Assembly: GCF_021028975.2 (NCBI RefSeq)
Contig: NC_059426.1
Location: forward strand, 31,124,001-31,188,000
DNA: 64,000 nt
DNA from: Sphaerodactylus townsendi
Taxonomy: Eukaryota
Direction of reading: 5' to 3'
In this document: positions 723-59,852 of the stretch, in pieces
Numbering within the stretch: the stretch's first letter is position 1
Layout: each line of letters opens with the position of its first letter
Notes under the pieces: model-generated
Database searches by the model: none
Told to the model about the DNA's origin: nothing
Seen by the model: the letters and a program-made list of their open reading frames with translations, nothing else
Program-made: the position numbers and the translations under genes

Positions 723-1087
723 ATTACTGGTCTTTTGCAAGTTGCAAAAAGCCATTTTCAGGAATTCATTGAATACATGTGTGATTTGAATGCTATGCTT
801 CAGATAACTTCATTAAATTTTGAATCTACACGCTTATGCCTTTAAACGCCATTTTAAATTAATGATTTGAGACTGTAACTTAATCAGTAGCCGCTTTCAA
901 TGTAAAATTAAATTTTGTTCAGTCTTTAATATTTTCTTCCGTATTCCTAACTTTTATCTGATTTTAATCTTAAAATTTACGAGGGGCCTGAAACGGCGTT
1001 TGTGCTGATTACTATCCGTGTTGATTTACACTTAATTCTAACCTTTCTTTCTTTCCTCCTTTTTTTCTAATCAATGCACATTCTCAG

Positions 1088-1102
1088 ATGAGCCTCAGCC
1101 AG
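1088..1102 (+). CDS. LRP2: Candidate 15-nt alternative microexon of LRP2 (ATGAGCCTCAGCCAG; adds EPQPD)
   Basis: ttctcag acceptor and CAG|gtatga donor. Upstream are a long pyrimidine tract, a CTAAC branch candidate and TGC at -13. Phase 1-1, matching the phase-1 start of the exon at 2380, with no stop. Confidence 0.6.
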
Positions 1103-1245
1103 GTATGATCATAAACCATATTGGACGCATGTTGCTATGGCGAAATTTCAGGTCACATTTGTTAAAAACCTAGGGCTTGTTTGCGGAAGCAGGGATCCCT
1201 GACCTGGTGTCAGAGATCGATTTACTCAGGTTTGTTTTTCTAAAC

Positions 1246-1431: not shown

Positions 1432-1482
1432 TTCTAAAGCAACAACCTTGATTGAGTTTGTTGCGAAGGGAGTCCAGACTGA

Positions 1483-1633
1483 GGCCCTTTCCGCACCTGC
1501 AGAATAATGCACTTTCAATCCGCTTTCACCATGGTTTGAAAATGGATTTTGCTATTCCGCACAGTAAAATCCAGCTGCAAAATGGATTGAAAATGGATTG
1601 AAAGTGCATTATTCTGCATGTGCGGAAGGGACC
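1483..1633. mobile_element. 151-bp palindromic PIF/Harbinger-like MITE
   Basis: TIR GGCCC(C/T)TTCCGCAC..GCAGAATAATGCACTTTCAATCC and TSD TGA/TGA; seven copies in the window. Confidence 0.8.
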
Positions 1634-2053
1634 TGAGTTTTGGCCACTCAAGTACTAATTTGCGATATCCAAAGATTAATGTCTGTTTGAAAGGATTGCG
1701 AATTTGTATCTTTCTATAGTATCCAGTCTATTCATTCTGGTTGGTTGAAGAATTCATTGGCTAGCGGGCACAATTGCTAATTTTCCTCCGATTGGTTCCC
1801 TGTGCATGGAAGAAATGGGCTGGATTCAAGTCTTCCATTTAACGGGACAAGTCATCAGAACCGATTTGTACCGCTTTCCCCTCAAAGCTACTTCAAAGGA
1901 TTCCGGAACCCTCAAGAATTCATTGGCATGGGGAGGGTGGGGGCATAAAAATAGGGAAGAGATCAATTCCGTGCAATCCCCCACCCCCATGCTACCTATT
2001 CTGGATGTATTCAGTGCACAGTCCTTTTTATTCATATCCTATTTCCCTGGCTA

Positions 2054-2379: not shown

Positions 2380-2628
2380 ACCAAGAGAGTTGCTCGGATA
2401 ATAATGCTGGCTGCACACACGAATGCATTCAGGGACCTTTTGGAGCCCAGTGCTCCTGCCCATTTGGGTACCAGCTGGCCAATGACTCCAAGACGTGCGA
2501 AGATATCAATGAGTGTGATCCTCCAGGATTCTGCAGCCAATACTGCCACAACGAAAGAGGATCTTTTAGGTGTTACTGTGATGAAGGCTATGTGCTAGAA
2601 ACCAATCAGAGGACTTGCAAAGTTGCAG
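2380..2628 (+). CDS. LRP2: LRP2 exon (249 nt), two EGF repeats [11 protein letters not shown]...CKVA
   Basis: aag| acceptor, G|gtaagg donor, phase 1-1, EGF and Ca-binding EGF cysteine pattern. Confidence 0.95.
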
Positions 2629-4518: not shown

Positions 4519-4669
4519 CTCTCCTTCCTCACATGCAGAATAATGCACTTTCAACCTACTTTCAATGTACTTTGAAGCTGGATTTTACTGTGCAGAATAG
4601 CAAAATCCACTTGCAAACAATTGTGAGAGTGGATTGAAAGTGTATTATTTTGCATGTACGGAAGAGGCC
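4519..4669. mobile_element. 151-bp Harbinger-like MITE copy (diverged left end)
   Basis: Same body as 1483-1633. Confidence 0.75.
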
Positions 4670-4854
4670 TCTGTCACCCTCTTGCATATATATATTCCTG
4701 TGGGGCAGCGGACTGGTCTTCATACACAAGCATTGTCTTCACTTCTGATCCTGTTCTGTTGTCTTTAGAAATAATAACTTCAGGAGAGGGGCCGTGGCTT
4801 GGTAGAAGAACCTTTGCTTGACAGATGGTCCCAGGTTCAATCCTCAGCACCTTG

Positions 4855-5619: not shown

Positions 5620-6230
5620 GCTGAGTGTGCCCCCCCATTACCCCCCCCCATTACTTTCTGGGTCTTCAATGTCATCAGGACCCATTACCTCCCCCCCCTC
5701 CTTTTTAGGAGGGTTAAGTTTAAGTTTTAGTTTAAGTAAGGTTTCGTGAGATGCCTTTTCTGGAAACAATTACTGTTTTAAGTGTGTTTATGGAAATTAT
5801 ATTCATGCTGATTTTATATATACTATTTTATGTTGTACACTGCCCAGAGCCCNNNNNNNNNNNNNNNNNNNNNNNNNNNNNNNNNNNNNNNNNNNNNNNN
5901 NNNNNNNNNNNNNNNNNNNNNNNNNNNNNNNNNNNNNNNNNNNNNNNNNNNNNNNNNNNNNNNNNNNNNNNNNNNNNNNNNNNNNNNNNNNNNNNNNNNN
6001 NNNNNNNNNNCTCAGGGCAGTGTACAACAAAATAACAGATAGAGCACAGTTAAAAAAATCAACAGCCATAAATAAATAATATAGGCCCTATTCACATTAA
6101 ATACTAACCCTGTTAAAAACAGCATATCAAAAATCAGTATATAATAGATGGCAGCCAACAGTTAAAAACCTTCCCAGGAGGGGAACGGCAGGGTCCATCA
6201 ATGTTATGACGGAGGGGGATGTTATGACAG
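5620..6230. mobile_element. Two L2-like 3' ends in tail-to-tail orientation across the N-gap 5853-6010
   Basis: gttgtacactgcccagag left of the gap and ctcagggcagtgtacaac right of it. Confidence 0.65.
5853..6010. other. Assembly gap (158 N)
   Basis: Direct reading. Confidence 0.99.
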
Positions 6231-6509: not shown

Positions 6510-7625
6510 GTAAGTGCTCTTTCCCTTTCCCTTCCTTCTGAAAACCCATAGTGTTATAATCAACTGAAATGTTGCTACTTTAGCAAGCAGTTGGTGGGTG
6601 TTGGAACTCTTGGAATAGTCCAGATGTCATGGCAAATCATGGCTTGCATCTTTAAAAACCGGGAGATAACTGTAGAGCACCAAACTACGTCCCAACTGGC
6701 TTGAAAATTATGGTTTGGCATTTCATCTGCAAACCAGAACTTCAGACTGGGATTAAGTGTGTCAGTGTGGTTACGATGATTAACCATGGGATTGATCCTA
6801 TTAACTGGGATTGATCCTATTAACTGGTGGCCTCCAAAATGGCTTATCCCAAGGACCTGGGGGATCCTTGTAGACAAAATGTCATGTGATGTGGATAGTT
6901 GTAGTGAAGGAATAGGAATTGGATGAAACTAATGGAAGAAGCTTGGGTGGGGGGGGGGGCAGACTCTAGACTTATTTATTTGGAACCAGCATTTATTAAT
7001 CAAGCAGCATTTGACCTTGATTAGTGTACATCCCACATACACTTTATATGATTTGAAAAACCATCAGGAATTTCAAGTAGTTAATTTACATAAGGCTTGT
7101 GTGATCTTAGTCCAATTTATTCTACATATGATAGATCATAGTTTTGTTTATTTATTTAGTTTTTTATCCTTCCCCTCTCCTGAACGCACCTTAATTGGGT
7201 TTCCTGCTTCCTACCATGTTACTGTCAGCCAGATCCAAAACAACACCTATAGGTTTTTACCTCGGACTTGATTGGCAGGCTTTTGGAACTGAGATAGCTC
7301 CTGCCATGCCATTTCCAGCCAGCAGCAAGATGACCCCCAGTGGTATTATGGGGTTGTGGTATCTCAAGTGGCCTGTGGGTTTGATTGGGTGTTGAACCGG
7401 CTCTGAATACTGAACCAAATATAGTCCCCCCACCATATACTGTGATTTTTCAAACTACTGAATGACCATCCTACTTTTGAAGTCCCAGCTGGACAGGAAT
7501 TACAAGAGGTTTAATGAGCTATGTTCATGGCCAACATGTTGCATTCAGCTTGGTAAGAGCCAGTGTGGTGTTTTGGTTAAGAGTGGCGGATTCTAATCTG
7601 GAGAATAATGCACTTCTTTCCACAG

Positions 7626-7854
7626 TGCTCACTTGATGTTCTGGACAGACTGGGGTCGGAATCCCCGGATCGAAAGAGCGAGCATGGATGGCACATTGCG
7701 AACCGCCATCGTCACCAGCAAGGTCTATTGGCCCAATGGGCTTGCCATCGACTATCCAAACAGATTGCTATATTTTGCTGATGCATACCTCGATTACATC
7801 GATTTCTGTGATTACAATGGAAACAACAGGCGGCAGGTGGTGGCAAGTGACTTG
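7626..7854 (+). CDS. LRP2: LRP2 exon (229 nt) [10 protein letters not shown]...VVASDL
   Basis: tttccacag| and |gtatga, phase 2-0. Confidence 0.95.
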
Positions 7855-9071: not shown

Positions 9072-9249
9072 GTTTTGCAGCATCCTCACGCCCTCACAAT
9101 CTTTGAAGATTTTGTATACTGGAGTGAGAAATACACCAACCGTGTTATTCGAGCCAACAAGTGGCATGGAGGAAATCAAACTGTTGTTATTTATAATATT
9201 CACCAACCTTTGGGTATTATGGCAGTCCACCCTGTGAACCAGCCATCTG
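9072..9249 (+). CDS. LRP2: LRP2 exon (178 nt) VLQHPHAL...HPVNQPS
   Basis: ttttag| and G|gtaagt, phase 0-1. Confidence 0.93.
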
Positions 9250-9526
9250 GTAAGTCTGGCAGACTATGTTTTGCCACAGAAAAGCAAAGCATGTGACTAT
9301 TAACCAATACTGAAAGTGGTTTTTACGCAGCTATCTGCAGTGAAGCTCAAACTAAGCTAGGGCACAGAAACATTCCTTTAAGGCTTCCATAAATGTACTG
9401 GGTCATTAGGTGAAATGTAAATACAGTGGACAGGATAATAGTGAATTAAGATAACCTTGTCTTAGCAGTGAATGAGAACTTCAGAAATGTCTTCTGTAGA
9501 CATGATTAGGGGCAACACTGATTTCA

Positions 9527-17143: not shown

Positions 17144-17572
17144 ATAATTGATTATATCTTGATGAGAGCATCCCTTAGTAGCCATTTGCTGTAAGAAAGC
17201 CATGCAAGTTTTCCTTGTTTGAGCTCATATAATGGCATTTGTCTAAAGAGAAGAAGTCTATAATATAATGGAGTGGAGGCTGCTGTTATAAAGGAAACAG
17301 AACTGTAGTCTGTTCCACTGTTTATTGCATGTATTAGCTTGCACTTACTGCATTGTTAATCTGTTACATATCCATTTTTGCATTGTTTCTGACATATCAT
17401 TTTTTGCATAGTTTCTAACTTTTGCGATCCTAATCCTATTACATTGTCCTATTCATTGCATAGTCCTATGGTAATGCTGTTTGATCGCATCATCTTACAC
17501 TGCTTTGAGTCTCAGTAAGAATGGCAGGCTACGAATGAAGTAAGTAAATAAATACTTTTTTTCTCCACTAAG

Positions 17573-17716
17573 GGTGAAATTCATAGAGTGAAGTCTGATG
17601 GAACGAACAGGACTGTATTTGCCCCGGCAGCTATTATTGGATCACCTTTTGGCCTAGCTTTAGATTGGATATCTGGAAACCTGTACTATAGTAACCCTGC
17701 CACGCAATCCATTGAG
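17573..17716 (+). CDS. LRP2: LRP2 exon (144 nt) GEIHRVKSDG...TQSIE
   Basis: ctaag| and |gtaagc, phase 0-0. Confidence 0.95.
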
Positions 17717-17857
17717 GTAAGCACCATATCTTCACAATTATTAAACTATATTATTGCAATCCAGTTGATAGAATTCATTCATACCTATAGTGTATAGTCA
17801 GTCTAGATTGCACGATGAAGCTCATGTAGGTTTGTATTTTGTTTGCATCAGCTAGAC

Positions 17858-19245: not shown

Positions 19246-21001
19246 GCAAGTTTAAATATGTCATGCGGTAGAAAATGAACAAGGATTGGATTATACCAGG
19301 CACATGAAGGAGAGGGTCCATTTTGTTCCCACCCTCGAAAACCTACCCCAGGAATTAGGGAACTCATGTTGACACATGGAGCAGAGCTGAAATGAAGATA
19401 GCAGTTTGGCAAAGTGATAACCAGTTTTTTGAACTCGCTGGTAGGATCTAATCTTAAGTGTGTCAATTTCAAAATGGGGCAACTGAAGAGTTTATGGAGG
19501 GAGCACTTCCATTCAAGGAAAATGGATTTGCTTCAGAAAATCAGAGTATGCTTTACTAAATGTGCTCCTCGTTCTAAAGGTGCTGCTGGCACGTGCACAC
19601 ATCTCGTTTTAGTTCCAGGCTGGTGACACCCTCTATTCTTGATACTAAATAGCTTCTTGTTTGGCCAGGCATGGCGAGTGAAAGTTCTCAAGCCAGGAAA
19701 TGGGGGGGGGGGGGCTGCATTTCACCCCCCACCCCTTTTTAAGACTACTAGTACTTAAATTAATGGATAAGCCTACTTGTAGTGATTTCTGTTTACTGGA
19801 AACTTTAAAAAACTTTCTATTGTGCTTTCACAATACGAACAAGTTAAAACAATAATATGCAAATATGTATACCTATATATAAAATGAAACTTCTAAACGG
19901 TAGCTGAACTTCTGAAAAGTAGCTGAATCTTTTTGAAGGCTCATTATCCAACTGGTGAAGGAAGACTTGTCAAACAAGGAGGCTTTCAGGTAGATCAAAA
20001 GAATGTGATTTTATTGGAGACTGTACGAATCAGACTTCCTTTCTTCAGGTCACTGGTTTTACCAGAGTCTGATTTGAGCTATTTGGAGAGACAGTATATG
20101 AATGTGCTAAGCTCTGGAAGATGACAGTGAGATCATAAATTGGCATTCCTGTGTAGCCAAGTTTAGAAGCTTAGTGCAACTCCATTTTAAACAGCTTCTC
20201 TTCCAAATGGGTACACTAACAGTAGCAGAGAGGCTGAAAAGTGCTTTAAGTGGCTTGTGTGAATTTGATCTTGGCTTTTTTGTTATGCTGCTGTCTAGGT
20301 TTAGAGATACTGGGGAACTAGTGCGTGTTAGTTAGGATTTGGGTGCATTTCTGAAACTACCCAGATAGTACCAGGGAGTGAAATTTTGTGTAGATTATTT
20401 AGGGTAACTGTAAAAATATCCTGCTGTACCATTTGGCTCAGGTTTAATTATTTGTTCAGTAATTTCTTTTGCATTTTCCTGAAACATGTTTTTCAGAATA
20501 TATTAGACATTCCACATGGCTACCACCAATGATGTAATGTGACAAAGATGGAGTGGGAAGTCACTCTTTGTAGCTTTCTCGACATAAACTGAAGTTACAT
20601 AATACACAGCTGTTGGGTGAACTAGTAACTTGTGGATTTGCTTGCGAACCTTTCTTAAGGTGTTGGGAGGTTCATGGAAATTCTTGCCTCACCGTAGGAG
20701 TTTGGGTTAGACAAAATGAAGCTGAATTTCGAATAGCCCTATGGTTATTTGCACTTTCCCCTGAAGTGGGGAGTGATTTTCATGTCAGTTTGCTTTAGTA
20801 ACAATTGCAAGGCTTTACTGTCAAATCCAGCAACACAAACACTCCTTTTTTTGAGAGCCAGTGTGGCTATAGGTTGAAATCCTGGTTTGGAAGATCCTCT
20901 CTGCTGCACAGGTTGCTTCAAGGATATTGTGAGGAAAAAGGGACCCCTCCTTGCCATCCTGAATGCCTTGGTGGGATAAAAATGTAACGGGTAGACTCTT
21001 A

Positions 21002-21152
21002 GGCCCCTTCCGCACACGCAGAATAATGCACATTCAGTCCACTTTCACAGTTGTTTGCAAGTGGATTTTGCTATTCTGTACAGTGAAATGCAGCTTCAAG
21101 GTGCATTGAAAGTGGATTGAAAGTGCATTATTCTGCATGTGCGGAAGGGGCC
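21002..21152. mobile_element. 151-bp Harbinger-like MITE copy
   Basis: GGCCCCTTCCGCAC...GTGCGGAAGGGGCC. Confidence 0.85.
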
Positions 21153-21231
21153 TACTACTTGGCCAACTGAGATCCCTCAAACACGTTACTCCTGTCAACT
21201 TTTGTGATAGTTGTGATAACGTTTATTTCAG

Positions 21232-21409: not shown

Positions 21410-22741
21410 GTACGTATGCACATGTGGATGCATTGTTGTGGGTCCTAATTTTTGTGTTGTTGTTCTAACAAAAAGAGCTTTTAAAAATAGTACTGACGTG
21501 ATTGACGTTCCAGAGAAAGTGAAAGACACCATAGGGTCTCATTTATGTTGCAACTGGAATAAATTCCGCTTACCAAGTTTTTAGAGGATGATTTTTCAAA
21601 GTCAAAAGGAATGCTCATGTGTATGTTTCTACTCACCTGTAGAGGGGCTTTCCATCTGTGCTTACAAACAGAAGGATCCCTGGTGCAACATTTTCCTTAT
21701 TGTGATTTTGCTAAGGGCATTGTGGGCCAGTGGTGGGTAAGGCTCCAACCAGGCTTGGGGATATTCATGAATGAAGAAAGGTATACTTTATACTATATTG
21801 CTATATGTACATGTGTACTTTCCCCAGCCAAACAAGTTGCAGCTCAGGAGGGTGCATGAGATTGTGAGAATGGTTATCCTGTTATTTATTCATAAACATT
21901 ACGTTACAGTCTTTTACTTTAAAAACACTTAGGGTGACCTACAAAACAAAAGTAATACAGTCATGTAGGATCGCCCAGATACTAGTCGATTAACCCTTAA
22001 ATGAACAAAACAATAAATGCAAAATAACAGAATAAGCAAAACAAATAGTAAGCATTCATCAAAATAAATCACTAGGCCTATACCACGTCACTGTTTTGCT
22101 TTTGGAGTAGTCCAGTACTATTCTGCATTGTTTAACATGTGTCTAATACTTACGCTTTCTTAAACACTGCTGTAATCGTAGCCTTATTGCTTGGCTTCTT
22201 AGATGTCTCATCCTATTGATTGTATTGACTCACACTGTATAATCTGTCTTGAGTCTCAATGAGAAAGGTGGATTGTAAATAAATAAAAATGCAGATCTAA
22301 ATTAAGATCTTGGAAGCACCCATAATACAAAAATGAAATCAACAGCATCAGTGGACTAAAAGCTAGAAAATCTTAAAAAGATAACATGGAAGCAAAACTG
22401 TTGGCTTTAGGAAGATATTTTATTTAGTCCCCTCCCAATTTATCCTTTTTAAAAGTTTGGCTACAATCCTGGAAAGTAATTTCCACTTTCCTAGGAGCAA
22501 ATATCATTGACGAAAGTTAGGCTTACTTCTGAGTAAATTTGCTTAGGGATTCTTCCATGAATTTCATGTCATGTCTAGTTGGGTCCTAATGTTAGCTTTT
22601 ATTTGGGATTATGTGAGGTGATATGGAGTTGATCTAAAGTTAAAAGGAAAAACTGAGGGGTTTAGTTTCAAAAACCAGGTGTTCTCTTGCATGTGGATAG
22701 CTGAATTGAATCTGTGATATTTAATATCTTTTATCTTCCAG

Positions 22742-22955
22742 ATTGAAAGAGGGAATGTGGATGGCACAAATAGGATGACCTTGGTTTCTCACCTCTCTCA
22801 CCCCTGGGGTGTGGCTGTCTATGGTTCTTTTCTGTATTACACTGATCGTGATTATGAAGTCATTGAGCGGGTTGACAAGTCTACCGGAGCAAATAAAGTG
22901 GTGCTGAGAGACAATGTTTCAAGACTGAAATGCCTCCGCGTTTATTATCGTGACA
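22742..22955 (+). CDS. LRP2: LRP2 exon (214 nt) IERGNVDG...RVYYRD
   Basis: cttccag| and A|gtgagt, phase 0-1. Confidence 0.95.
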
Positions 22956-23114
22956 GTGAGTATTTGATGTAGCTTGTGAAAGCTCAGGGCAAAGAGAAAG
23001 AATTAAAATCCCCCCTTCCCCGCATGGGGCCGCCTCTTAAATTTATTCAGGAAGACCCCAGATCTTAAAGCTGGCAACTTGCTTATTAATTTATTCTGGA
23101 AAGTATAAATAAAT

Positions 23115-23905: not shown

Positions 23906-24162
23906 GGCTAAAGACAGTGGCTGCTCCAAGTTCACCCCGTGAATTTTGACAATAGAAAAGGGATTTGAATCCAGATCTTCCCAGACTAGTCTGAGACTCT
24001 TAACTACTGCACCATGCTGGTTCTTGTTAGCTAGCTAGCTGATACATTTGTATTCTACCTGTCCTTAGGTGCTTAGACTGGCATATATGGTTATCTTTTC
24101 CTTATTTGATGCTCACAAAAGCCTTGTTAGATAAGTTAAGGTGAGAGACTGTGGTTGACTAA

Positions 24163-24313
24163 GGTCCCTTCCGCACATACAGAATAATTCGCATTCAATC
24201 CAATTTCACAATTGTTTGAAAGTGGATTTTGCTATTTTGCACAGTAAAATCCAGTTGCAAAGTACATTGAAAGTGGATTGAAAGTGCATTATTCTGCATG
24301 TGAGGAAGGGACC
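24163..24313. mobile_element. 151-bp Harbinger-like MITE copy
   Basis: Same body; flanks TAA/AAA. Confidence 0.85.
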
Positions 24314-25570: not shown

Positions 25571-26014
25571 TGTGTGAAACTTTCTTACTTGAAAAATACT
25601 GTGTTTGAGGTGATGTTGGCTGATACAAACACGTTGTCTCTCATATCTGTGGTGATATATTCATGCAGGAAGATTAAGATCTATGCAAAAACCAGTTTCA
25701 ATAAAATAAACCTCATAAAAATTTCCACTGAAATCATTAAGAATAGCTACACCAATTATAAACCTTTCTGCAGTGAAGTGAAAGCAAGTAGTGAACCAGA
25801 GCAGAAAACAGTCTTCTTGTGGTTGATAAAGCTGCAAGGGAAGGGAGATGACAACTACTGCTTTTTAAGGAAAAAATGTAGTGGTTAAAAACAACAACAG
25901 TTGTGAGTGGTTGTTTTTAGCAATTTAAAAGGTGGGATGGGTACAACAAGTTACCTGCTGCTGCTGCAGCTCAGATCCAAACAGAAATTATTCATTGGAT
26001 AAAATTTCCTCTAA

Positions 26015-26156
26015 GGCCCCTCCCACACATGCAGAATCGCACTTTGCAGCTGGATTTTACTGTACGGAATTTTACTGTATGGAATAGCAAAATTCACTTG
26101 CAAACAATTGTGAAAGTAGATTGAAAGTGCATTATTCTGCATGTGCGGAAGGGGCC
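26015..26156. mobile_element. Harbinger-like MITE copy with internal indels
   Basis: GGCCCCTCCCACAC..GTGCGGAAGGGGCC. Confidence 0.8.
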
Positions 26157-28172: not shown

Positions 28173-28578
28173 GTTTAGCATGTCAAATTAAGCCCTGCCT
28201 GGGGAAGATGTACAGAGACACTATCAAAACTAGTTGTTGTATCATAAACAGAGAGCTGGAGAGAGAAGGAAACGATCTTAGCCATACTTTACTCATTAAA
28301 GTCAGGTTTTAACCCATAGTTAAAACAAATCAAAGTTTTTTGTAAGCCCACTTAAAACTGTGATTTTTTTAAAAAAGTAATTTGTGGCCAGTATTTAATC
28401 ATGGTTTAGGAAATCATGTGAAACCAAGATTAATTAAGAAAGTTCAGTGTTCTATCTGCTTAATTTTAGGTTGTAGAATGTTTCTTTGTATAGTTCTACA
28501 TTGTTCTTCTGTACTTACTTGCATGTTCTCAACAAAGCTTAAGAATGAATGAATCCATGTTTTATGAGCCCTTCGGGG

Positions 28579-28716
28579 NNNNNNNNNNNNNNNNNNNNNN
28601 NNNNNNNNNNNNNNNNNNNNNNNNNNNNNNNNNNNNNNNNNNNNNNNNNNNNNNNNNNNNNNNNNNNNNNNNNNNNNNNNNNNNNNNNNNNNNNNNNNNN
28701 NNNNNNNNNNNNNNNN
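28579..28716. other. Assembly gap (138 N)
   Basis: Direct reading. Confidence 0.99.
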
Positions 28717-37864: not shown

Positions 37865-38753
37865 CTCCTGGGAAACTTCTTCAATAGAAGTCAAGAGATA
37901 GCCAGTATCTGTTTGGCCAGAGTCCCACTGAATATTTCGCTGGGATATATAGAAGAGCAGAGACCAGATTGCATCCAAGAGCAGAATAATTGAAATGTAG
38001 AAGATAAAAAGATTAATGTAGGAGATGTGGTATAGATGTTAAAACTGACTTGCCCTCTTAAATTTAGAAAGGGTGGGATATAATTTTGAGAAGGATTAGG
38101 AAGTATTTCCCCGGTTTTAACATCCGAATAATAATGTGCAAGTTAAGATACAAGAAAACATGTTGTGGAATATGAAATATTCTTAACACCCACCTGTAAC
38201 AAGAATATTCCTAAAACTATTCATTAATTGTGTTTCAAATTCAGAGTTCTTCTGTACCCATACATCCTTCCCAGTTCAATGCGTTGAAAGACTGCCAATG
38301 GGGGAGGGTCACAAGGAAGTGGAAAAGGAGGATTTATGGGGGAAGTCTACTATGACTCACTTTTGATAAAATTCAGTAGGGAAACTCAAGCACGTATAAA
38401 GGAAATGTCATGTTTTCCATTGACTATGTGGTGGCGTCGCTTTATGGCGATGTGTTGTCGGGCGCGTTCCCCATTTATTCCTTCAGTTTGAACTTTTTTG
38501 TCACTTGTTACATTTTATGGAAGGATTTGTAGACTCTAGAAATGATCTTCCAGGTAGAAACAAAACTAACGCCTTTTCCTTCAGACTGACTTATTCAAGA
38601 TGTGTATTTTACTTTACATGCAGTCCGCTTTGCAGCTGTGTTTGCCCTGGCAGGTAAAAACAAACTAAGCTCCCATGTACTTCTTTGATGCATTTGTCAA
38701 GACTGTGAGACTCTGTTCCACCAGTGACGCTTCATCACATTTTTCTCCTTCAG

Positions 38754-46885: not shown

Positions 46886-47152
46886 GGGAGCAGCAGTGGC
46901 GTAGGAGGTTAAGAGCAGGTGCATTCTGATCTGGAGGAACCGGGTTTGATTCCCCGCTCTGCCGCTGAGCTGTGGAGGCTTATCTGGGGAATTCAGATTA
47001 GCCTGTACACTCCCACACACGCCAGCTGGGTGACCTTGGGCTAGTCGCAGTTCTTCTGAGCTCTCTCAGCCCCACCTACCTCACAGGGTGTTTGTTGTGA
47101 GGGGGGAAGGGCAAGGAGATTGTAAGCCCCTTTGAGTCTCCTTACAGGAGAG
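46886..47152 (+). mobile_element. Young tRNA-derived SINE (Squam3-like); tail falls in the N-gap
   Basis: A and B boxes with CpGs retained; homologous to the copies at 9527, 49543 and 54820. Confidence 0.9.
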
Positions 47153-47304
47153 NNNNNNNNNNNNNNNNNNNNNNNNNNNNNNNNNNNNNNNNNNNNNNNN
47201 NNNNNNNNNNNNNNNNNNNNNNNNNNNNNNNNNNNNNNNNNNNNNNNNNNNNNNNNNNNNNNNNNNNNNNNNNNNNNNNNNNNNNNNNNNNNNNNNNNNN
47301 NNNN
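47153..47304. other. Assembly gap (152 N)
   Basis: Direct reading. Confidence 0.99.
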
Positions 47305-51412: not shown

Positions 51413-51554
51413 GGACTTTTTTGTCAGCTGCAGAATAATGCACTTTCAGTCCACTTTCACAATTGTTTGCAAGTGGATTTGGCTATTCCGCACAGCTGCA
51501 AAGTGCATTGAAAGTGAATTGAAAGTGCATGATTCTTCATGTGCAGAAGGGGCC
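51413..51554. mobile_element. Harbinger-like MITE copy (diverged)
   Basis: gcagaataatgcactttca...tgaaagtgcatgattc. Confidence 0.75.
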
Positions 51555-52090
51555 CCAGAGAGTAGATGAGGTTGACTCATAGGCAGCTGGGCCATAGGTC
51601 ATCTGGGATGGGGGTGGTCTCCCTGGGCAGACCAGAAGGCCCCAGGCATCACTGGTGTCTGTTCCTTGAGAATTTCAGAAATCATCACTGGGGACTAGGC
51701 CTCTTGTTTTTGAAGGGATGTATCTGAGTTCAGAAGTTTGATAAGCAACATGGGGAATTATTGTGACACTTTAAAAATGTCTGTCTGACAAAGAGCTCTA
51801 CAGCAAATGTCCTTGGAGATCATGCGTGATGATAAAAAGTCTTAGAACAGTACCATTGCAAAAAAGGCAAAATGAAACCGAGTTGCATTAATAGGGGAAT
51901 TATGAATAAGAGACCATTCGTATTCATGCTGTTGCCAAAATTCATAAATATTTGCTTCAGAATATGGATTTGCATAGCTTTTGATGTTCGCATGTATTAC
52001 AGTTCAAACATATTCATTTTGCAATTGCACAGAATGTACTTTTAATTTAAGTCTGTTTTAGGCTAGGGCCAGACAAGATATTATGTTAGA

Positions 52091-58005: not shown

Positions 58006-58265
58006 GTAGGTATTCCAGTCATTATTTCCTTTTAGTGCCACTGTTTTTCAGAGAGGTAGCCTGTTGCAACTAAAATAAAGCCTGTTGCAACTATCTGTTG
58101 CAACTAAAATAAAGAGTTTTGCTTTAGACACCAACATATTAACTTTTGTAAGCCAGCTCCCATGCCACCAGATGCATGAAATGCTCCATTTAGTCAGCAG
58201 GTGTATATATTACCAGCCAGCACACATGAGGCCCTTATATTGAATCATCTCACTAGTCCATCAGA

Positions 58266-58416
58266 GGTTCCTTTCACACATGCAAAATAACGCACTTTCA
58301 ATCCACTTTCAATGCACTTTGCAGCTGGATTTTACTGTGCAGAATAGCAAAATCCACTTTCAAACAATTGTGAAAGTGGATTGAAAGTGCATTATTCTGC
58401 ATGTGCGGAAGGGGCC
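58266..58416. mobile_element. 151-bp Harbinger-like MITE copy
   Basis: Same body; TSD AGA/AGA. Confidence 0.85.
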
Positions 58417-59852
58417 AGAGGCAGTATTGTATACTGATAGTGGCCATGGGCCCCCAGAGTTTCACATATTTTACTCTCTTATCCTTAACTGGAGATGCTG
58501 AGGATTAAACTGGGTATTTTGTGCATGCTGAGCTGTACTACTAAGCCATGGACCATGATGATTTTACAACACTTTTACATGTTTGTGACATGGGTCTTCA
58601 GCACAAAATTTAGATTTTGTAGGACATCCAGTATCTTCAAATCTGTGACACTGCTGTGGGTATCCCCATACCCTGTAGTAAGCCAACATATGCGTAGCAC
58701 ACTTTGAACCACAGTCTTCTGACATGAGAATCTTCAGCTTTCTTGTGCAGAGATTAAGCCAACCTTTCGGTGGGAGGTTGCATGTATAATTTATTTGTGT
58801 TCTGCTTCTTGCTGGTGCAAGTGATTAATACCAAGAGAAGTGACACAGTCCAGGTCTGGTAGAATGAAGGTGGAAGGCGGCAAGAAGCTTTGGAAGACAG
58901 GGGTATGGAGATAAGAGATATTTAAATAGAAGTAGACAGTACAAATAAGTGGAAGTTATGCTGTGGTGATATTTAAAGGCCTTCTTTACCTGTTGTGCTT
59001 AGATATTTTCTATTGCATAAGGAAACTCAAGCTGCAATAAATCAATTAATCTTAATGCACACTTTCCAGTTTTTATTTTCATGTGTTACAATTTCTTGCT
59101 TCCCATGGGTTGAGATCCAGCCGATTCACTCAGTTCCCCTCCTTGCACCAGTCTCTATCTCAGATGGCTTTGTCTGTGCAGACTTTATTACCTTTGGCGT
59201 GGCCTTTTTGATGGTCAACGAAGACCTCCTCTCTTTTCCACCAGAAGAAAAGTTGGTTTGATCCAACCCTATGTTGATGCATGTCTACTTAAAGGCCATT
59301 TGTAATTAAAGAAGCAAAAAAATGATTATTCCCTCCATCAGAATGAATTATATGCTTCAGTTGCACTGGGCAAGGATTATTACTTCCTTTCTCGTCAGTA
59401 AATCCTTCCACGTAATATCAAAATAACTTCCAAACCAATCCTCCACATTCACCTGGAGAGTTGATTCATTTGTCTTTGCTTATGACGCATAGAACGTTAG
59501 ACCAAAGTCCGTTCACGAGATCTGCATATTCTGAAAATATTTATTTATTTATATTTTAGATTTATTAGCCGCCCTCCCCCGAAAGGCTCAGTGCAACAAT
59601 AAAAGCATAGTAACAATGAATATAACATTAAAACCAACAACAGCACATTCTAATAAACTAATATCTCAGAAATTTTATTTTAAAAAAAACCTCAGATGGT
59701 GATAAAAACCCTCCCACCCACCATTTATGGTTGCAACTGGTTTTCTTATCTGGAAATTAATTACAGTACCTCTCATGTTGAATATTTTTCTTTGAAAAAC
59801 TCATCTGGTAGCACTTTGTTTTAAATTACAGTGATGTTAGATTAAGTTATAC

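What the first reader, a model, noticed from the sequence alone, without database searches (positions are those of the whole stretch)
984..1131. Candidate 15-nt SRRM3/4-type microexon in megalin, inserting EPQPD before the EGF pair
Seen: exon-like ATGAGCCTCAGCCAG (1088-1102) between ttctcAG and GTatga, with no AG for about 100 nt upstream (984-1085). There is a branch candidate TTCTAAC (1036-1042), a long pyrimidine tract set back from the AG (1042-1068), TGC at 1075-1077 and GCATG downstream (1127-1131). It is phase 1-1 like the next exon, so inclusion turns x-Q-E-S-C into x-E-P-Q-P-D-Q-E-S-C with no frameshift. Known: a UGC just before the 3' splice site with an upstream-shifted pyrimidine tract marks SRRM3/SRRM4-dependent neural and endocrine microexons, and downstream GCAUG is the RBFOX enhancer position. 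The canonical human megalin sequence as I recall it has no such insert. Inference: a tissue-regulated proline-rich linker between an LDLa ligand-binding cluster and the following EGF/propeller could tune receptor conformation or ligand release. The flank (about 750-1170) has no recognisable TE, unlike much of the intronic DNA here.
Basis: partly seen in the sequence, partly recalled or inferred. Interest (0 to 1): 0.8.

Follow-up and report, generated by a model that had tools for sequence, protein, structure and literature searches.

The report
Known conserved 15-nt megalin microexon
The 15-base candidate is a genuine, anciently conserved alternative microexon of the megalin (LRP2) gene that adds five amino acids to an inter-domain linker, but it is already in this gecko's own RefSeq protein model and in a published microexon catalogue, so it is a correct call and not a discovery.

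Summary
The window is LRP2 of the gecko Sphaerodactylus townsendi or a near-identical relative. Exon 1088-1102 lies 1277 nt upstream of the EGF-pair exon (2380-2628) and reads N-EPQP-D in phase 1.

It is a real exon. The species' own RefSeq protein, XP_048340432.1, already reads ...DESPLCN-EPQPD-QESC.... Of 119 LRP2 cluster representatives, 23 carry a 5-residue insert at this junction, from teleosts to mammals. Several species have annotated isoform pairs with and without it. In seven orthologous introns (reptile, bird, mammal, three fish, this gecko) the 15-nt exon, its AG/GT, a long AG-free zone, an upstream UGC and a strong donor are all conserved. It is the only conserved island in the intron. 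Teleost lrp2b lacks it.

A published table lists a 15-nt human LRP2 microexon (VastDB HsaEX0036425) as neural-enriched, and spacing to a second LRP2 exon indicates it is the ortholog. The SRRM3/4-type reading is therefore plausible but untested. The downstream GCAUG is gecko-only. Verdict: already known, low novelty, function unstudied.

The parts
1088..1102 (+). 15-nt alternative cassette microexon of LRP2. In phase 1 it reads (A)AT GAG CCT CAG CCA G(AC), which gives N-EPQP-D.
   Evidence: Sequence. The peptide is in XP_048340432.1 = P0257 at residue 819. Orthologous 15-nt exons are present in L001, L012, L009, L003, L006 and L007.
1086..1087 (+). 3' splice-site AG of the microexon
   Evidence: Invariant in all 7 aligned loci (alignment A1).
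1103..1108 (+). 5' splice site GTATGA, preceded by CAG. It scores about 8.2 bits with an approximate matrix.
   Evidence: CAG|GTATGA is conserved in amniotes and CAG|GTAGGA in fish.
984..1085 (+). AG-free zone of 102 nt upstream of the acceptor
   Evidence: The orthologous zones are 62-138 nt. Only 8 of 4140 AGs on this strand have a zone of 100 nt or more.
1042..1068 (+). 27-nt pure pyrimidine tract, set back 18 nt from the AG
   Evidence: C/T-rich in all aligned amniotes.
1036..1042 (+).
   Evidence: Sequence. Only partly conserved in A1. Inferred, not mapped.
1006..1009 (+). TGAT, invariant in all seven loci and about 80 nt upstream of the AG. It is an alternative distal branch-point or regulatory element.
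   Evidence: Invariant columns T19 G20 A21 T22 of A1. Its function is inferred.
1075..1077 (+). UGC between the pyrimidine tract and the AG, 11 nt upstream of the AG
   Evidence: At the same position in L001, L012 and L009. Fish have a UGC at -19, and L006 has another at -7. The background rate of a TGC within 20 nt upstream of any AG in this window is 28%.
1043..1115 (+). Conserved island, the only part of the 2.4-kb intron stretch that aligns to other species
   Evidence: blastn: 86.7% over 75 nt to the bird-like L001 (E 4e-20) and 80.8% over 78 nt to the mammalian L009. This is higher than the neighbouring coding exon, which is 83.4% identical to L001.
1127..1131 (+). GCATG 25 nt downstream of the donor. 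Not conserved.
   Evidence: No GCATG within 300 nt downstream in L001, L003, L006 or L007, and none in the aligned 45 nt of L009 or L012.
2380..2628 (+). Downstream constitutive exon (EGF pair after LDLa cluster II), phase 1 to phase 1
   Evidence: phmmer matches LRP2 structures at residues 1351-1435. 82 of 82 residues are identical to P0257.

Best explanation
Window 1088-1102 is a genuine, alternatively included 15-nt cassette microexon of LRP2 (megalin).

What it encodes. The upstream exon ends in phase 1 with an A. When the exon is skipped, the junction reads ...DESPLC-N-QESC.... When it is included, it reads ...DESPLC-N-EPQP-D-QESC.... The spacer between the last cysteine of LDLa repeat 15 (the end of ligand-binding cluster II) and the first cysteine of the following EGF module therefore grows from 4 to 9 residues, gaining two prolines and two acidic residues.

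How old it is. The exon dates at least to the common ancestor of ray-finned fish and tetrapods. It is kept in teleost lrp2a and absent from lrp2b.

How it is recognised (inferred). Recognition rests on a conserved intronic block: a distal branch point, a long pyrimidine tract set back from the AG, a UGC about 11 nt before the AG, a UCUC-like run, and a strong donor. This is the layout described for SRRM3/4-enhanced neural microexons. Together with the published neural enrichment of the presumed human ortholog, I put SRRM3/4 dependence at about 0.55.

What is shown and what is not. The existence of the exon, its conservation, its coding effect and its prior annotation are shown here. The tissue pattern in the gecko, the trans-acting factor and any effect on ligand binding or pH-driven release are inferred. 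The confidence value refers to the exon being real, conserved and alternatively annotated.
For: 1. Species' own model. Window exons are 100% identical to P0257 = XP_048340432.1, LRP2 of Sphaerodactylus townsendi. Other reptile, bird, frog and fish LRP2 are 72-84% identical. P0257 contains EPQPD directly before the 82-residue translation of 2382-2627.

2. Spread across species. Of 119 LRP2 cluster representatives, 93 have the 4-residue spacer and 23 have a 5-residue insert of the type [ED]-x-[QL]-[PQ]-D at this exact junction. Examples are EPQPD in gecko, turtle, duck, kiwi, Tasmanian devil and ground squirrel; EPLPD in 14 ray-finned fish, including the zebrafish lrp2a precursor; and DPLPD in sturgeon.

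3. Isoform pairs within one species, with and without the insert: Xenopus laevis X1/X3 against X2/X4, X. tropicalis X1 against X2, Rhinatrema X1 against X2, Geotrypetes X1/X2 against X3, and Sarcophilus X1/2/3/5 against X4/X6.

4. Genomic orthologs. The exon stands as a separate 15-nt exon with AG and GT in a bird-like locus (L001), a reptile (L012), a carnivore-like mammal (L009-L011) and three fish (L003, L006, L007), 209-367 nt upstream of the EGF exon where that exon was located (L001, L003, L006, L007). In L001 the upstream exon ends TGC A|GTAAGT, which is phase 1.

5. Footprint. The microexon island is the only intronic match between the gecko and every other species. Around the exon, 39-44 of 50 positions are identical among amniotes (alignment A1).

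6. Cis layout. It fits the published description of the SRRM3/4 class.

7. Published catalogue. [quoted passage not shown]

8. Orthology by spacing. The same table lists a 30-nt LRP2 exon 38.5 kb further along the human gene. The gecko counterpart (38624-38653, VRFAAVFALA) lies 37.5 kb downstream of 1088, and Xenopus isoforms differ by exactly these two segments.
Against:
- Orthology to HsaEX0036425 is inferred from gene, length and spacing only. Human sequence was deliberately not consulted.
- The mouse sheet of the same table shows no Lrp2 microexon in the part I saw.
- The supplement of a zebrafish srrm3/srrm4 study has no lrp2a entry in the 200 files held. That is weak evidence against strong SRRM3/4 dependence in fish.
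- The zebrafish reference lrp2a and several single-model species carry the insert, which could mean broad rather than neural-restricted inclusion outside mammals.
- LRP2 is mainly expressed in epithelia that are not known for SRRM3/4 expression (general knowledge, not tested here).
Confidence: 0.93

Rival explanations
1. The exon is real but is not an SRRM3/4-dependent neural microexon. It would be included broadly in LRP2-expressing epithelia (kidney tubule, neuroepithelium, eye), at least in non-mammals. General splicing factors would recognise its strong donor and long pyrimidine tract, and mammals would have reduced its inclusion.
For: - The zebrafish lrp2a precursor and 13 other ray-finned fish representatives carry EPLPD.
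- Single-model species such as the gecko, Antechinus and kiwi carry the insert.
- There is no lrp2a entry in the supplement of the zebrafish srrm3/4 study.
- In fish the pyrimidine tract runs up to the AG, a more ordinary acceptor.
Against: - The UGC, the long AG-free zone and the strong donor are conserved in all seven loci.
- A published table classes the presumed human ortholog as neural-enriched. That class requires a mean inclusion of 25 or less in other tissues.
Confidence: 0.35
2. Inclusion is driven by RBFOX binding the GCAUG 25 nt downstream of the donor, as the reader proposed as an added enhancer.
For: GCATG is at 1127-1131, a position where RBFOX sites usually enhance inclusion (general knowledge).
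Against: - No GCATG lies within 300 nt downstream in L001, L003, L006 or L007, and none in the aligned 45 nt of L009 or L012.
- The three fish instead share a GCATG about 75 nt upstream, and the mammal has one about 55 nt upstream. By the usual position rule those would repress inclusion.
Confidence: 0.1
3. The candidate is a chance AG...GT pseudo-exon, and the annotated inserts are gene-prediction artefacts copied between species by homology.
For: Short AG-N-GT pairs are plentiful, with 5948 on this strand. Some LRP2 models at this junction are clear read-through artefacts: tuatara SKLPFN, Sinocyclocheilus SKSY and Amia calva NEPLPVSNGW....
Against: - The exon and its intronic flanks are the only conserved island in the intron from fish to mammal, and are more conserved than the adjacent coding exon.
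- Frame, length and splice sites are kept in seven independent genomic loci.
- The paralog lrp2b has only a ~135-nt intron there and no insert in its proteins.
- A transcript-based catalogue lists a 15-nt LRP2 microexon.
Confidence: 0.02

Closest known systems
RefSeq model XP_048340432.1 (LRP2, Sphaerodactylus townsendi), and the LRP2 isoform models of other vertebrates that carry the 5-residue insert
   Same: Same gene, same genome or a near-identical one, and same exon. The model reads CN-EPQPD-QESC, and its neighbouring exons are identical to the window.
   Different: Nothing differs for the exon itself. The model is only 3839 residues long and omits the 30-nt exon at 38624-38653.
VastDB event HsaEX0036425: human LRP2, 15 nt, listed as a neural-enriched microexon in Supplementary Table 2 of bioRxiv 10.1101/2022.04.02.486809
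   Same: Same gene and same length. It has the same spacing to a second, 30-nt alternative LRP2 exon: 38.5 kb in human and 37.5 kb in the gecko.
   Different: Orthology is inferred from gene, length and spacing alone; the human sequence was not consulted. The tissue pattern is known for human only. No SRRM3/4 perturbation value for this event was seen in the files held.
The SRRM3/SRRM4 (eMIC-domain) dependent neural and endocrine microexon program
   Same: Length of 3-27 nt, frame kept, strong donor, branch point and pyrimidine tract far from the AG, a UGC between them, a UCU/CUC-rich stretch upstream, and deep vertebrate conservation.
   Different: Dependence on SRRM3/4 is not shown for this exon. 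The host gene is chiefly epithelial, unlike the typical neuronal or secretory-pathway hosts.
The DAAM1 neuronal microexon (PMC12056172), whose inclusion extends an inter-domain linker
   Same: A small in-frame insert that lengthens a linker between folded modules, according to the abstract listed.
   Different: A different protein and compartment (cytoskeletal formin against the extracellular receptor stalk). No functional data exist for the LRP2 insert.

Membership tests
LRP2 (megalin) coding cassette exon | Lies within the LRP2 gene, on the sense strand, between the exons it would join | tested here: met
   The exon at 2380-2628 matches LRP2 structures at residues 1351-1435. 28 window exons match P0257 in order on the + strand.
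LRP2 (megalin) coding cassette exon | Its peptide is found at the predicted junction in LRP2 proteins | tested here: met
   EPQPD lies directly before QESC in P0257, the same species. 23 of 119 cluster representatives carry the insert.
LRP2 (megalin) coding cassette exon | Alternative usage: both forms occur in one species | tested here: met
   Annotated isoform pairs exist in Xenopus laevis, X. tropicalis, Rhinatrema, Geotrypetes and Sarcophilus. Only the including model is on record for the gecko itself.
LRP2 (megalin) coding cassette exon | Junction reads in RNA of this species | not testable with these tools
SRRM3/4-dependent neural microexon | Length of 3-27 nt with the frame preserved | tested here: met
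   15 nt, open in phase 1.
SRRM3/4-dependent neural microexon | UGC between the branch point or pyrimidine tract and the acceptor AG | tested here: met
   TGC at 1075-1077. The same -11 position holds in L001, L012 and L009, and fish have it at -19. The published frequency in this class is 74-79%. The background rate in this window is 28%.
SRRM3/4-dependent neural microexon | Pyrimidine tract and branch point displaced upstream (long AG-free zone, weak proximal acceptor) together with a strong donor | tested here: met
   The AG-free zone is 102 nt here and 62-138 nt in orthologs. The proximal acceptor scores -2.1 and the donor 8.2-9.1 bits, with approximate matrices typed from general knowledge.
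SRRM3/4-dependent neural microexon | Neural (and/or endocrine) enrichment of inclusion | not testable with these tools
   No reads were available. The presumed human ortholog HsaEX0036425 is listed as enriched in neural tissues.
SRRM3/4-dependent neural microexon | Inclusion changes when SRRM3/4 is removed or expressed | not tested
   No such value was found. The SRRM3 knock-down tables in the held supplement do not list LRP2, and the zebrafish srrm3/4 supplement has no lrp2a.
RBFOX-enhanced exon | Conserved (U)GCAUG in the downstream intron | tested here: not met
   It is present only in the gecko, at +25, and absent downstream in the other six loci.

The most novel reading that the evidence does not exclude
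The linker microexon defines a neural or sensory form of megalin. Lengthening the LA15-EGF spacer from 4 to 9 residues would change how ligand-binding cluster II docks on the following EGF/beta-propeller unit. That could alter ligand choice or acid-triggered release in neuroepithelium, retina or inner ear. A second conserved alternative exon of 30 nt (38624-38653, between LA16 and LA17), which is also listed as neural-enriched in human, would act with it. No paper found here studies either exon.
Probability: 0.25. Interest if true: 0.5.

Novelty: already known. Interest (0 to 1): 0.25.

Why it matters
Megalin is the main multiligand endocytic receptor of kidney tubule, neuroepithelium and eye, and its loss causes Donnai-Barrow syndrome (general knowledge). 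This linker insert has been kept for more than 400 million years, its intronic flanks are more conserved than the neighbouring coding exon, and in human it is neural-enriched. That is a reasonable lead for isoform-specific receptor behaviour. The searches run here found no functional study of it.

For the scan, the result shows that a reader working from raw sequence can recover a true 15-nt exon. It adds no new biology, because annotation pipelines and VastDB already hold the exon.

Tried and rejected
- **Earlier scan notes.** The search of earlier findings by place and by words gave nothing relevant.
- **Representative search.** The search with the EGF exon mostly returned unrelated multi-EGF proteins. 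It was useful only for one full-length LRP2 (P0047) and some genomic ORF fragments.
- **Word searches.** Searches with the EGF exon and with the LA exon of L001 returned only genomic read-through ORFs and no transcript-derived fragment crossing the junction. They gave loci but no direct RNA evidence.
- **Full-length lookups.** Lookups of Xenopus tropicalis and kiwi LRP2 gave no DNA because the genes exceed 100 kb.
- **Literature.** Searches for LRP2 or megalin with microexon, Srrm4, Srrm3, alternatively spliced, or splice variant found no paper on this exon.
- **Supplements.** PMC9303857 and PMC12868881 have no supplements held. PMC12626424 has no lrp2a entry. PMC7935315 has only LRP2BP hits.
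- **Sequences not used.** No human sequence was fetched or compared; only published coordinates were read. The mammalian contigs L009-L011 were checked first. They are closest to dog (89%) and lynx and 79% identical to a monkey, so I did not take them for human.

Full report
**Observation.**
- The acceptor ttctcAG ends at 1087, the 15-nt ATGAGCCTCAGCCAG occupies 1088-1102, and the donor GTatga starts at 1103.
- There is no AG between 984 and 1085.
- TTCTAAC is at 1036-1042, and a 27-nt pure pyrimidine run is at 1042-1068.
- TGC is at 1075-1077 and GCATG at 1127-1131.

The next coding exon is 2380-2628 (249 nt, phase 1 to phase 1). Its translation matches solved LRP2 structures at residues 1351-1435, the EGF pair that follows LDLa cluster II. 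The rest of the window carries three beta-propellers, the ten-repeat LDLa cluster III and the next EGF pair, all on the + strand.

**Chance.** I used an approximate donor matrix typed from general knowledge. The + strand has 5948 AG-(3..27 nt)-GT pairs. Of these, 71 have a donor of at least 8 bits, and three of those have an AG-free zone of at least 60 nt. Only this candidate also has a 22/25 pyrimidine window and a TGC within 20 nt. The - strand has none. The thresholds were chosen after seeing the candidate, so I treat this as supportive only.

**Identity of the genome, and prior annotation.** A tblastn of several LRP2 proteins against the window gives 100% identity for most exons with P0257, which is XP_048340432.1, LRP2 of the gecko Sphaerodactylus townsendi. 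Turtle, bird, crocodilian, tuatara, marsupial, frog and fish LRP2 are 72-84% identical. The 82-residue translation of 2382-2627 is an exact substring of P0257. In P0257 it is preceded by ...DESPLCN-EPQPD, and window 1090-1101 translates to EPQP. The exon is therefore already part of this species' RefSeq model.

**Distribution among LRP2 proteins.** I searched with a full-length LRP2 (P0047) restricted to residues 1250-1345.
- Of the 119 LRP2 cluster representatives with the junction motif, 93 have a 4-residue spacer between the last cysteine of LA15 and the first cysteine of the EGF module (mostly NQES).
- Another 23 have a 9-residue spacer with an insert of the type [ED]-x-[QL]-[PQ]-D.
- The inserts are EPQPD in gecko, painted turtle, duck, kiwi, Tasmanian devil and ground squirrel; ELQPD in naked mole-rat; DLQQD in a Peromyscus; EPLPD in 14 ray-finned fish, including the zebrafish lrp2a precursor and bowfin; and DPLPD in sturgeon.
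- Three further models are plain intron read-through artefacts.
- Teleost lrp2b proteins never carry the insert.

Cluster members show both forms annotated in one species: Xenopus laevis X1/X3 (EYQPD) against X2/X4, X. tropicalis X1 against X2, Rhinatrema X1 against X2, Geotrypetes X1/X2 (ELQPD) against X3, and Sarcophilus X1/2/3/5 against X4/X6. One white-shark model has a 5-residue insert (SSLLPD). I could not check it.

**Genomic conservation.** Short genomic ORF fragments found by the protein searches led to contigs that span this intron in other species.
- A separate 15-nt exon with AG and GT is present in a bird-like locus (L001 2003-2017, NEPQPD), a reptile (L012 1166-1180, NEPQPD), a carnivore-like mammal (L009 1623-1637, NEPWPD) and three fish (L003, L006, L007; NEPLPD or NEHLPD).
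- In L001 the upstream exon ends TGC A|GTAAGT, which is phase 1.
- In the lrp2b-type locus L008 the intron is only about 135 nt and holds no such exon.
- When the gecko intron stretch 1-2379 is compared with each locus, the only match is the island around the microexon: 1043-1115 at 86.7% to L001, 1033-1109 at 80.8% to L009, and 893-1122 at 71.6% to L012. The adjacent coding exon is 83.4% identical to L001.
- In the seven-way alignment A1, the AG, most of the exon and GTA-GA are invariant. Amniotes share 39-44 of the 50 positions around the exon.

A chance pseudo-exon or an artefact copied between annotations cannot explain this pattern.

**Regulatory signals.** A recent study of microexon architecture describes SRRM3/4-dependent microexons as follows. 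They have stronger donors. Their pyrimidine tracts and branch points lie farther from the AG, which leaves a weak proximal acceptor. They carry a bipartite UCU_CUC...UGC enhancer, and 74-79% of such exons have a UGC between branch point and AG.

The LRP2 exon fits this description in all seven loci:
- The AG-free zones are 62-138 nt.
- The UGC is 11 nt before the AG in amniotes and 19 nt before it in fish.
- The donors score 8.2-9.1 bits.
- For comparison, a TGC within 20 nt upstream of any AG occurs at 28% of AGs in this window.
- A TGAT about 80 nt upstream (1006-1009) is invariant in all seven loci and may be the true distal branch point or another element.

The fish share a GCATG about 75 nt upstream and the mammal has one about 55 nt upstream. 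I therefore reject a conserved downstream RBFOX enhancer.

**What is already published.** Full-text searches found no paper that discusses an LRP2 microexon. However, Supplementary Table 2 of the islet-microexon preprint (bioRxiv 10.1101/2022.04.02.486809) lists HsaEX0036425, LRP2, 15 nt, program N, type MIC. The table legend defines N as exons enriched in neural tissues. The methods require a mean inclusion of no more than 25 in other tissues.

The same table lists a 30-nt LRP2 exon 38.5 kb further along the human gene. Xenopus laevis isoforms differ by exactly two segments: the 5 residues at position 1349 and 10 residues (VRFAAVFAVK) at position 2741, between LA16 and LA17. In the window a matching 30-nt exon (VRFAAVFALA) lies at 38624-38653, 37.5 kb downstream of 1088. 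Gene, length and spacing therefore indicate that HsaEX0036425 is the ortholog. I did not consult the human sequence, so this step is inference.

The part of the mouse sheet I saw has no Lrp2 microexon. The SRRM3 knock-down tables in the held files do not list LRP2. A zebrafish srrm3/4 study's supplement has no lrp2a entry.

**Mechanism.**
- Shown: the exon adds EPQP and regenerates the flanking N and D, so the LA15-to-EGF spacer grows from 4 to 9 residues.
- Inferred: inclusion is favoured in neural cells through SRRM3/4 acting on the UGC-containing enhancer. I put this at about 0.55. The main rival, at about 0.35, is broad SRRM3/4-independent inclusion, at least outside mammals.
- Speculative: the longer, proline- and acid-rich spacer loosens the coupling between ligand-binding cluster II and the EGF/propeller unit, and so tunes ligand binding or release.

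**Limits.**
- No human contig was fetched. The mammalian contigs were checked and are carnivore-like.

**Verdict.** The regulatory label is plausible and the RBFOX detail is wrong. The exon is already annotated and catalogued, so novelty is low. Its function remains unstudied.

Noticed in passing
window 38624-38653 (+): A second conserved alternative LRP2 exon of 30 nt, encoding VRFAAVFALA between LA16 (exon ending about 37706) and LA17 (exon starting 38754). Its acceptor reads ...catgcag, with a UGC directly before the AG, and its donor is CAG|GTAAAA. It matches the 10-residue segment VRFAAVFAVK that distinguishes Xenopus laevis isoforms, and it probably corresponds to the 30-nt neural-enriched human event HsaEX1022161. 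It is not in the gecko RefSeq model P0257.
   Followed up: partly
window 1477-1638, with copies at about 4523-4675, 20998-21153, 24157-24313, 26011-26156, 51425-51558 and 58265-58420: A palindromic repeat of about 155 bp that also matches itself in reverse, typical of a miniature inverted-repeat transposon. It is scattered through the LRP2 introns at 72-90% identity.
   Followed up: no
window 907-953, aligned to L001 1820-1866: A second, weaker conserved intronic patch (76.6% over 47 nt to the bird-like locus) about 135-180 nt upstream of the microexon. The reptile locus L012 aligns continuously over window 893-1122. It may be a distal regulatory element.
   Followed up: partly
P0257 (XP_048340432.1) against the window, for example 9072-9353, 17552-17743 and 22682-22957: The gecko RefSeq LRP2 model is only 3839 residues, against about 4650 in other species. 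Some window exons align to it at only 71-82% or with overlapping query ranges, so the model may miss or misjoin exons. The window also holds 449 N in gaps near 5850-5990, 28530-28680 and 47140-47300.
   Followed up: no
L008 about 7561-7697 (teleost lrp2b-type locus): In the lrp2b paralog the intron between the LA15 exon and the EGF exon is only about 135 nt and has no microexon. This fits the lack of the insert in every lrp2b protein seen.
   Followed up: partly
proteins P0246 (tuatara), P0206 and P0210 (Sinocyclocheilus), P0339 (Amia calva), P0335 (white shark): Public LRP2 models with odd sequence at this junction. SKLPFN and SKSY are read-through of the LA15 exon donor, and NEPLPVSNGW... 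is read-through of the microexon donor. The shark model has SSLLPD, which could be a cartilaginous-fish version of the microexon or another artefact.
   Followed up: no
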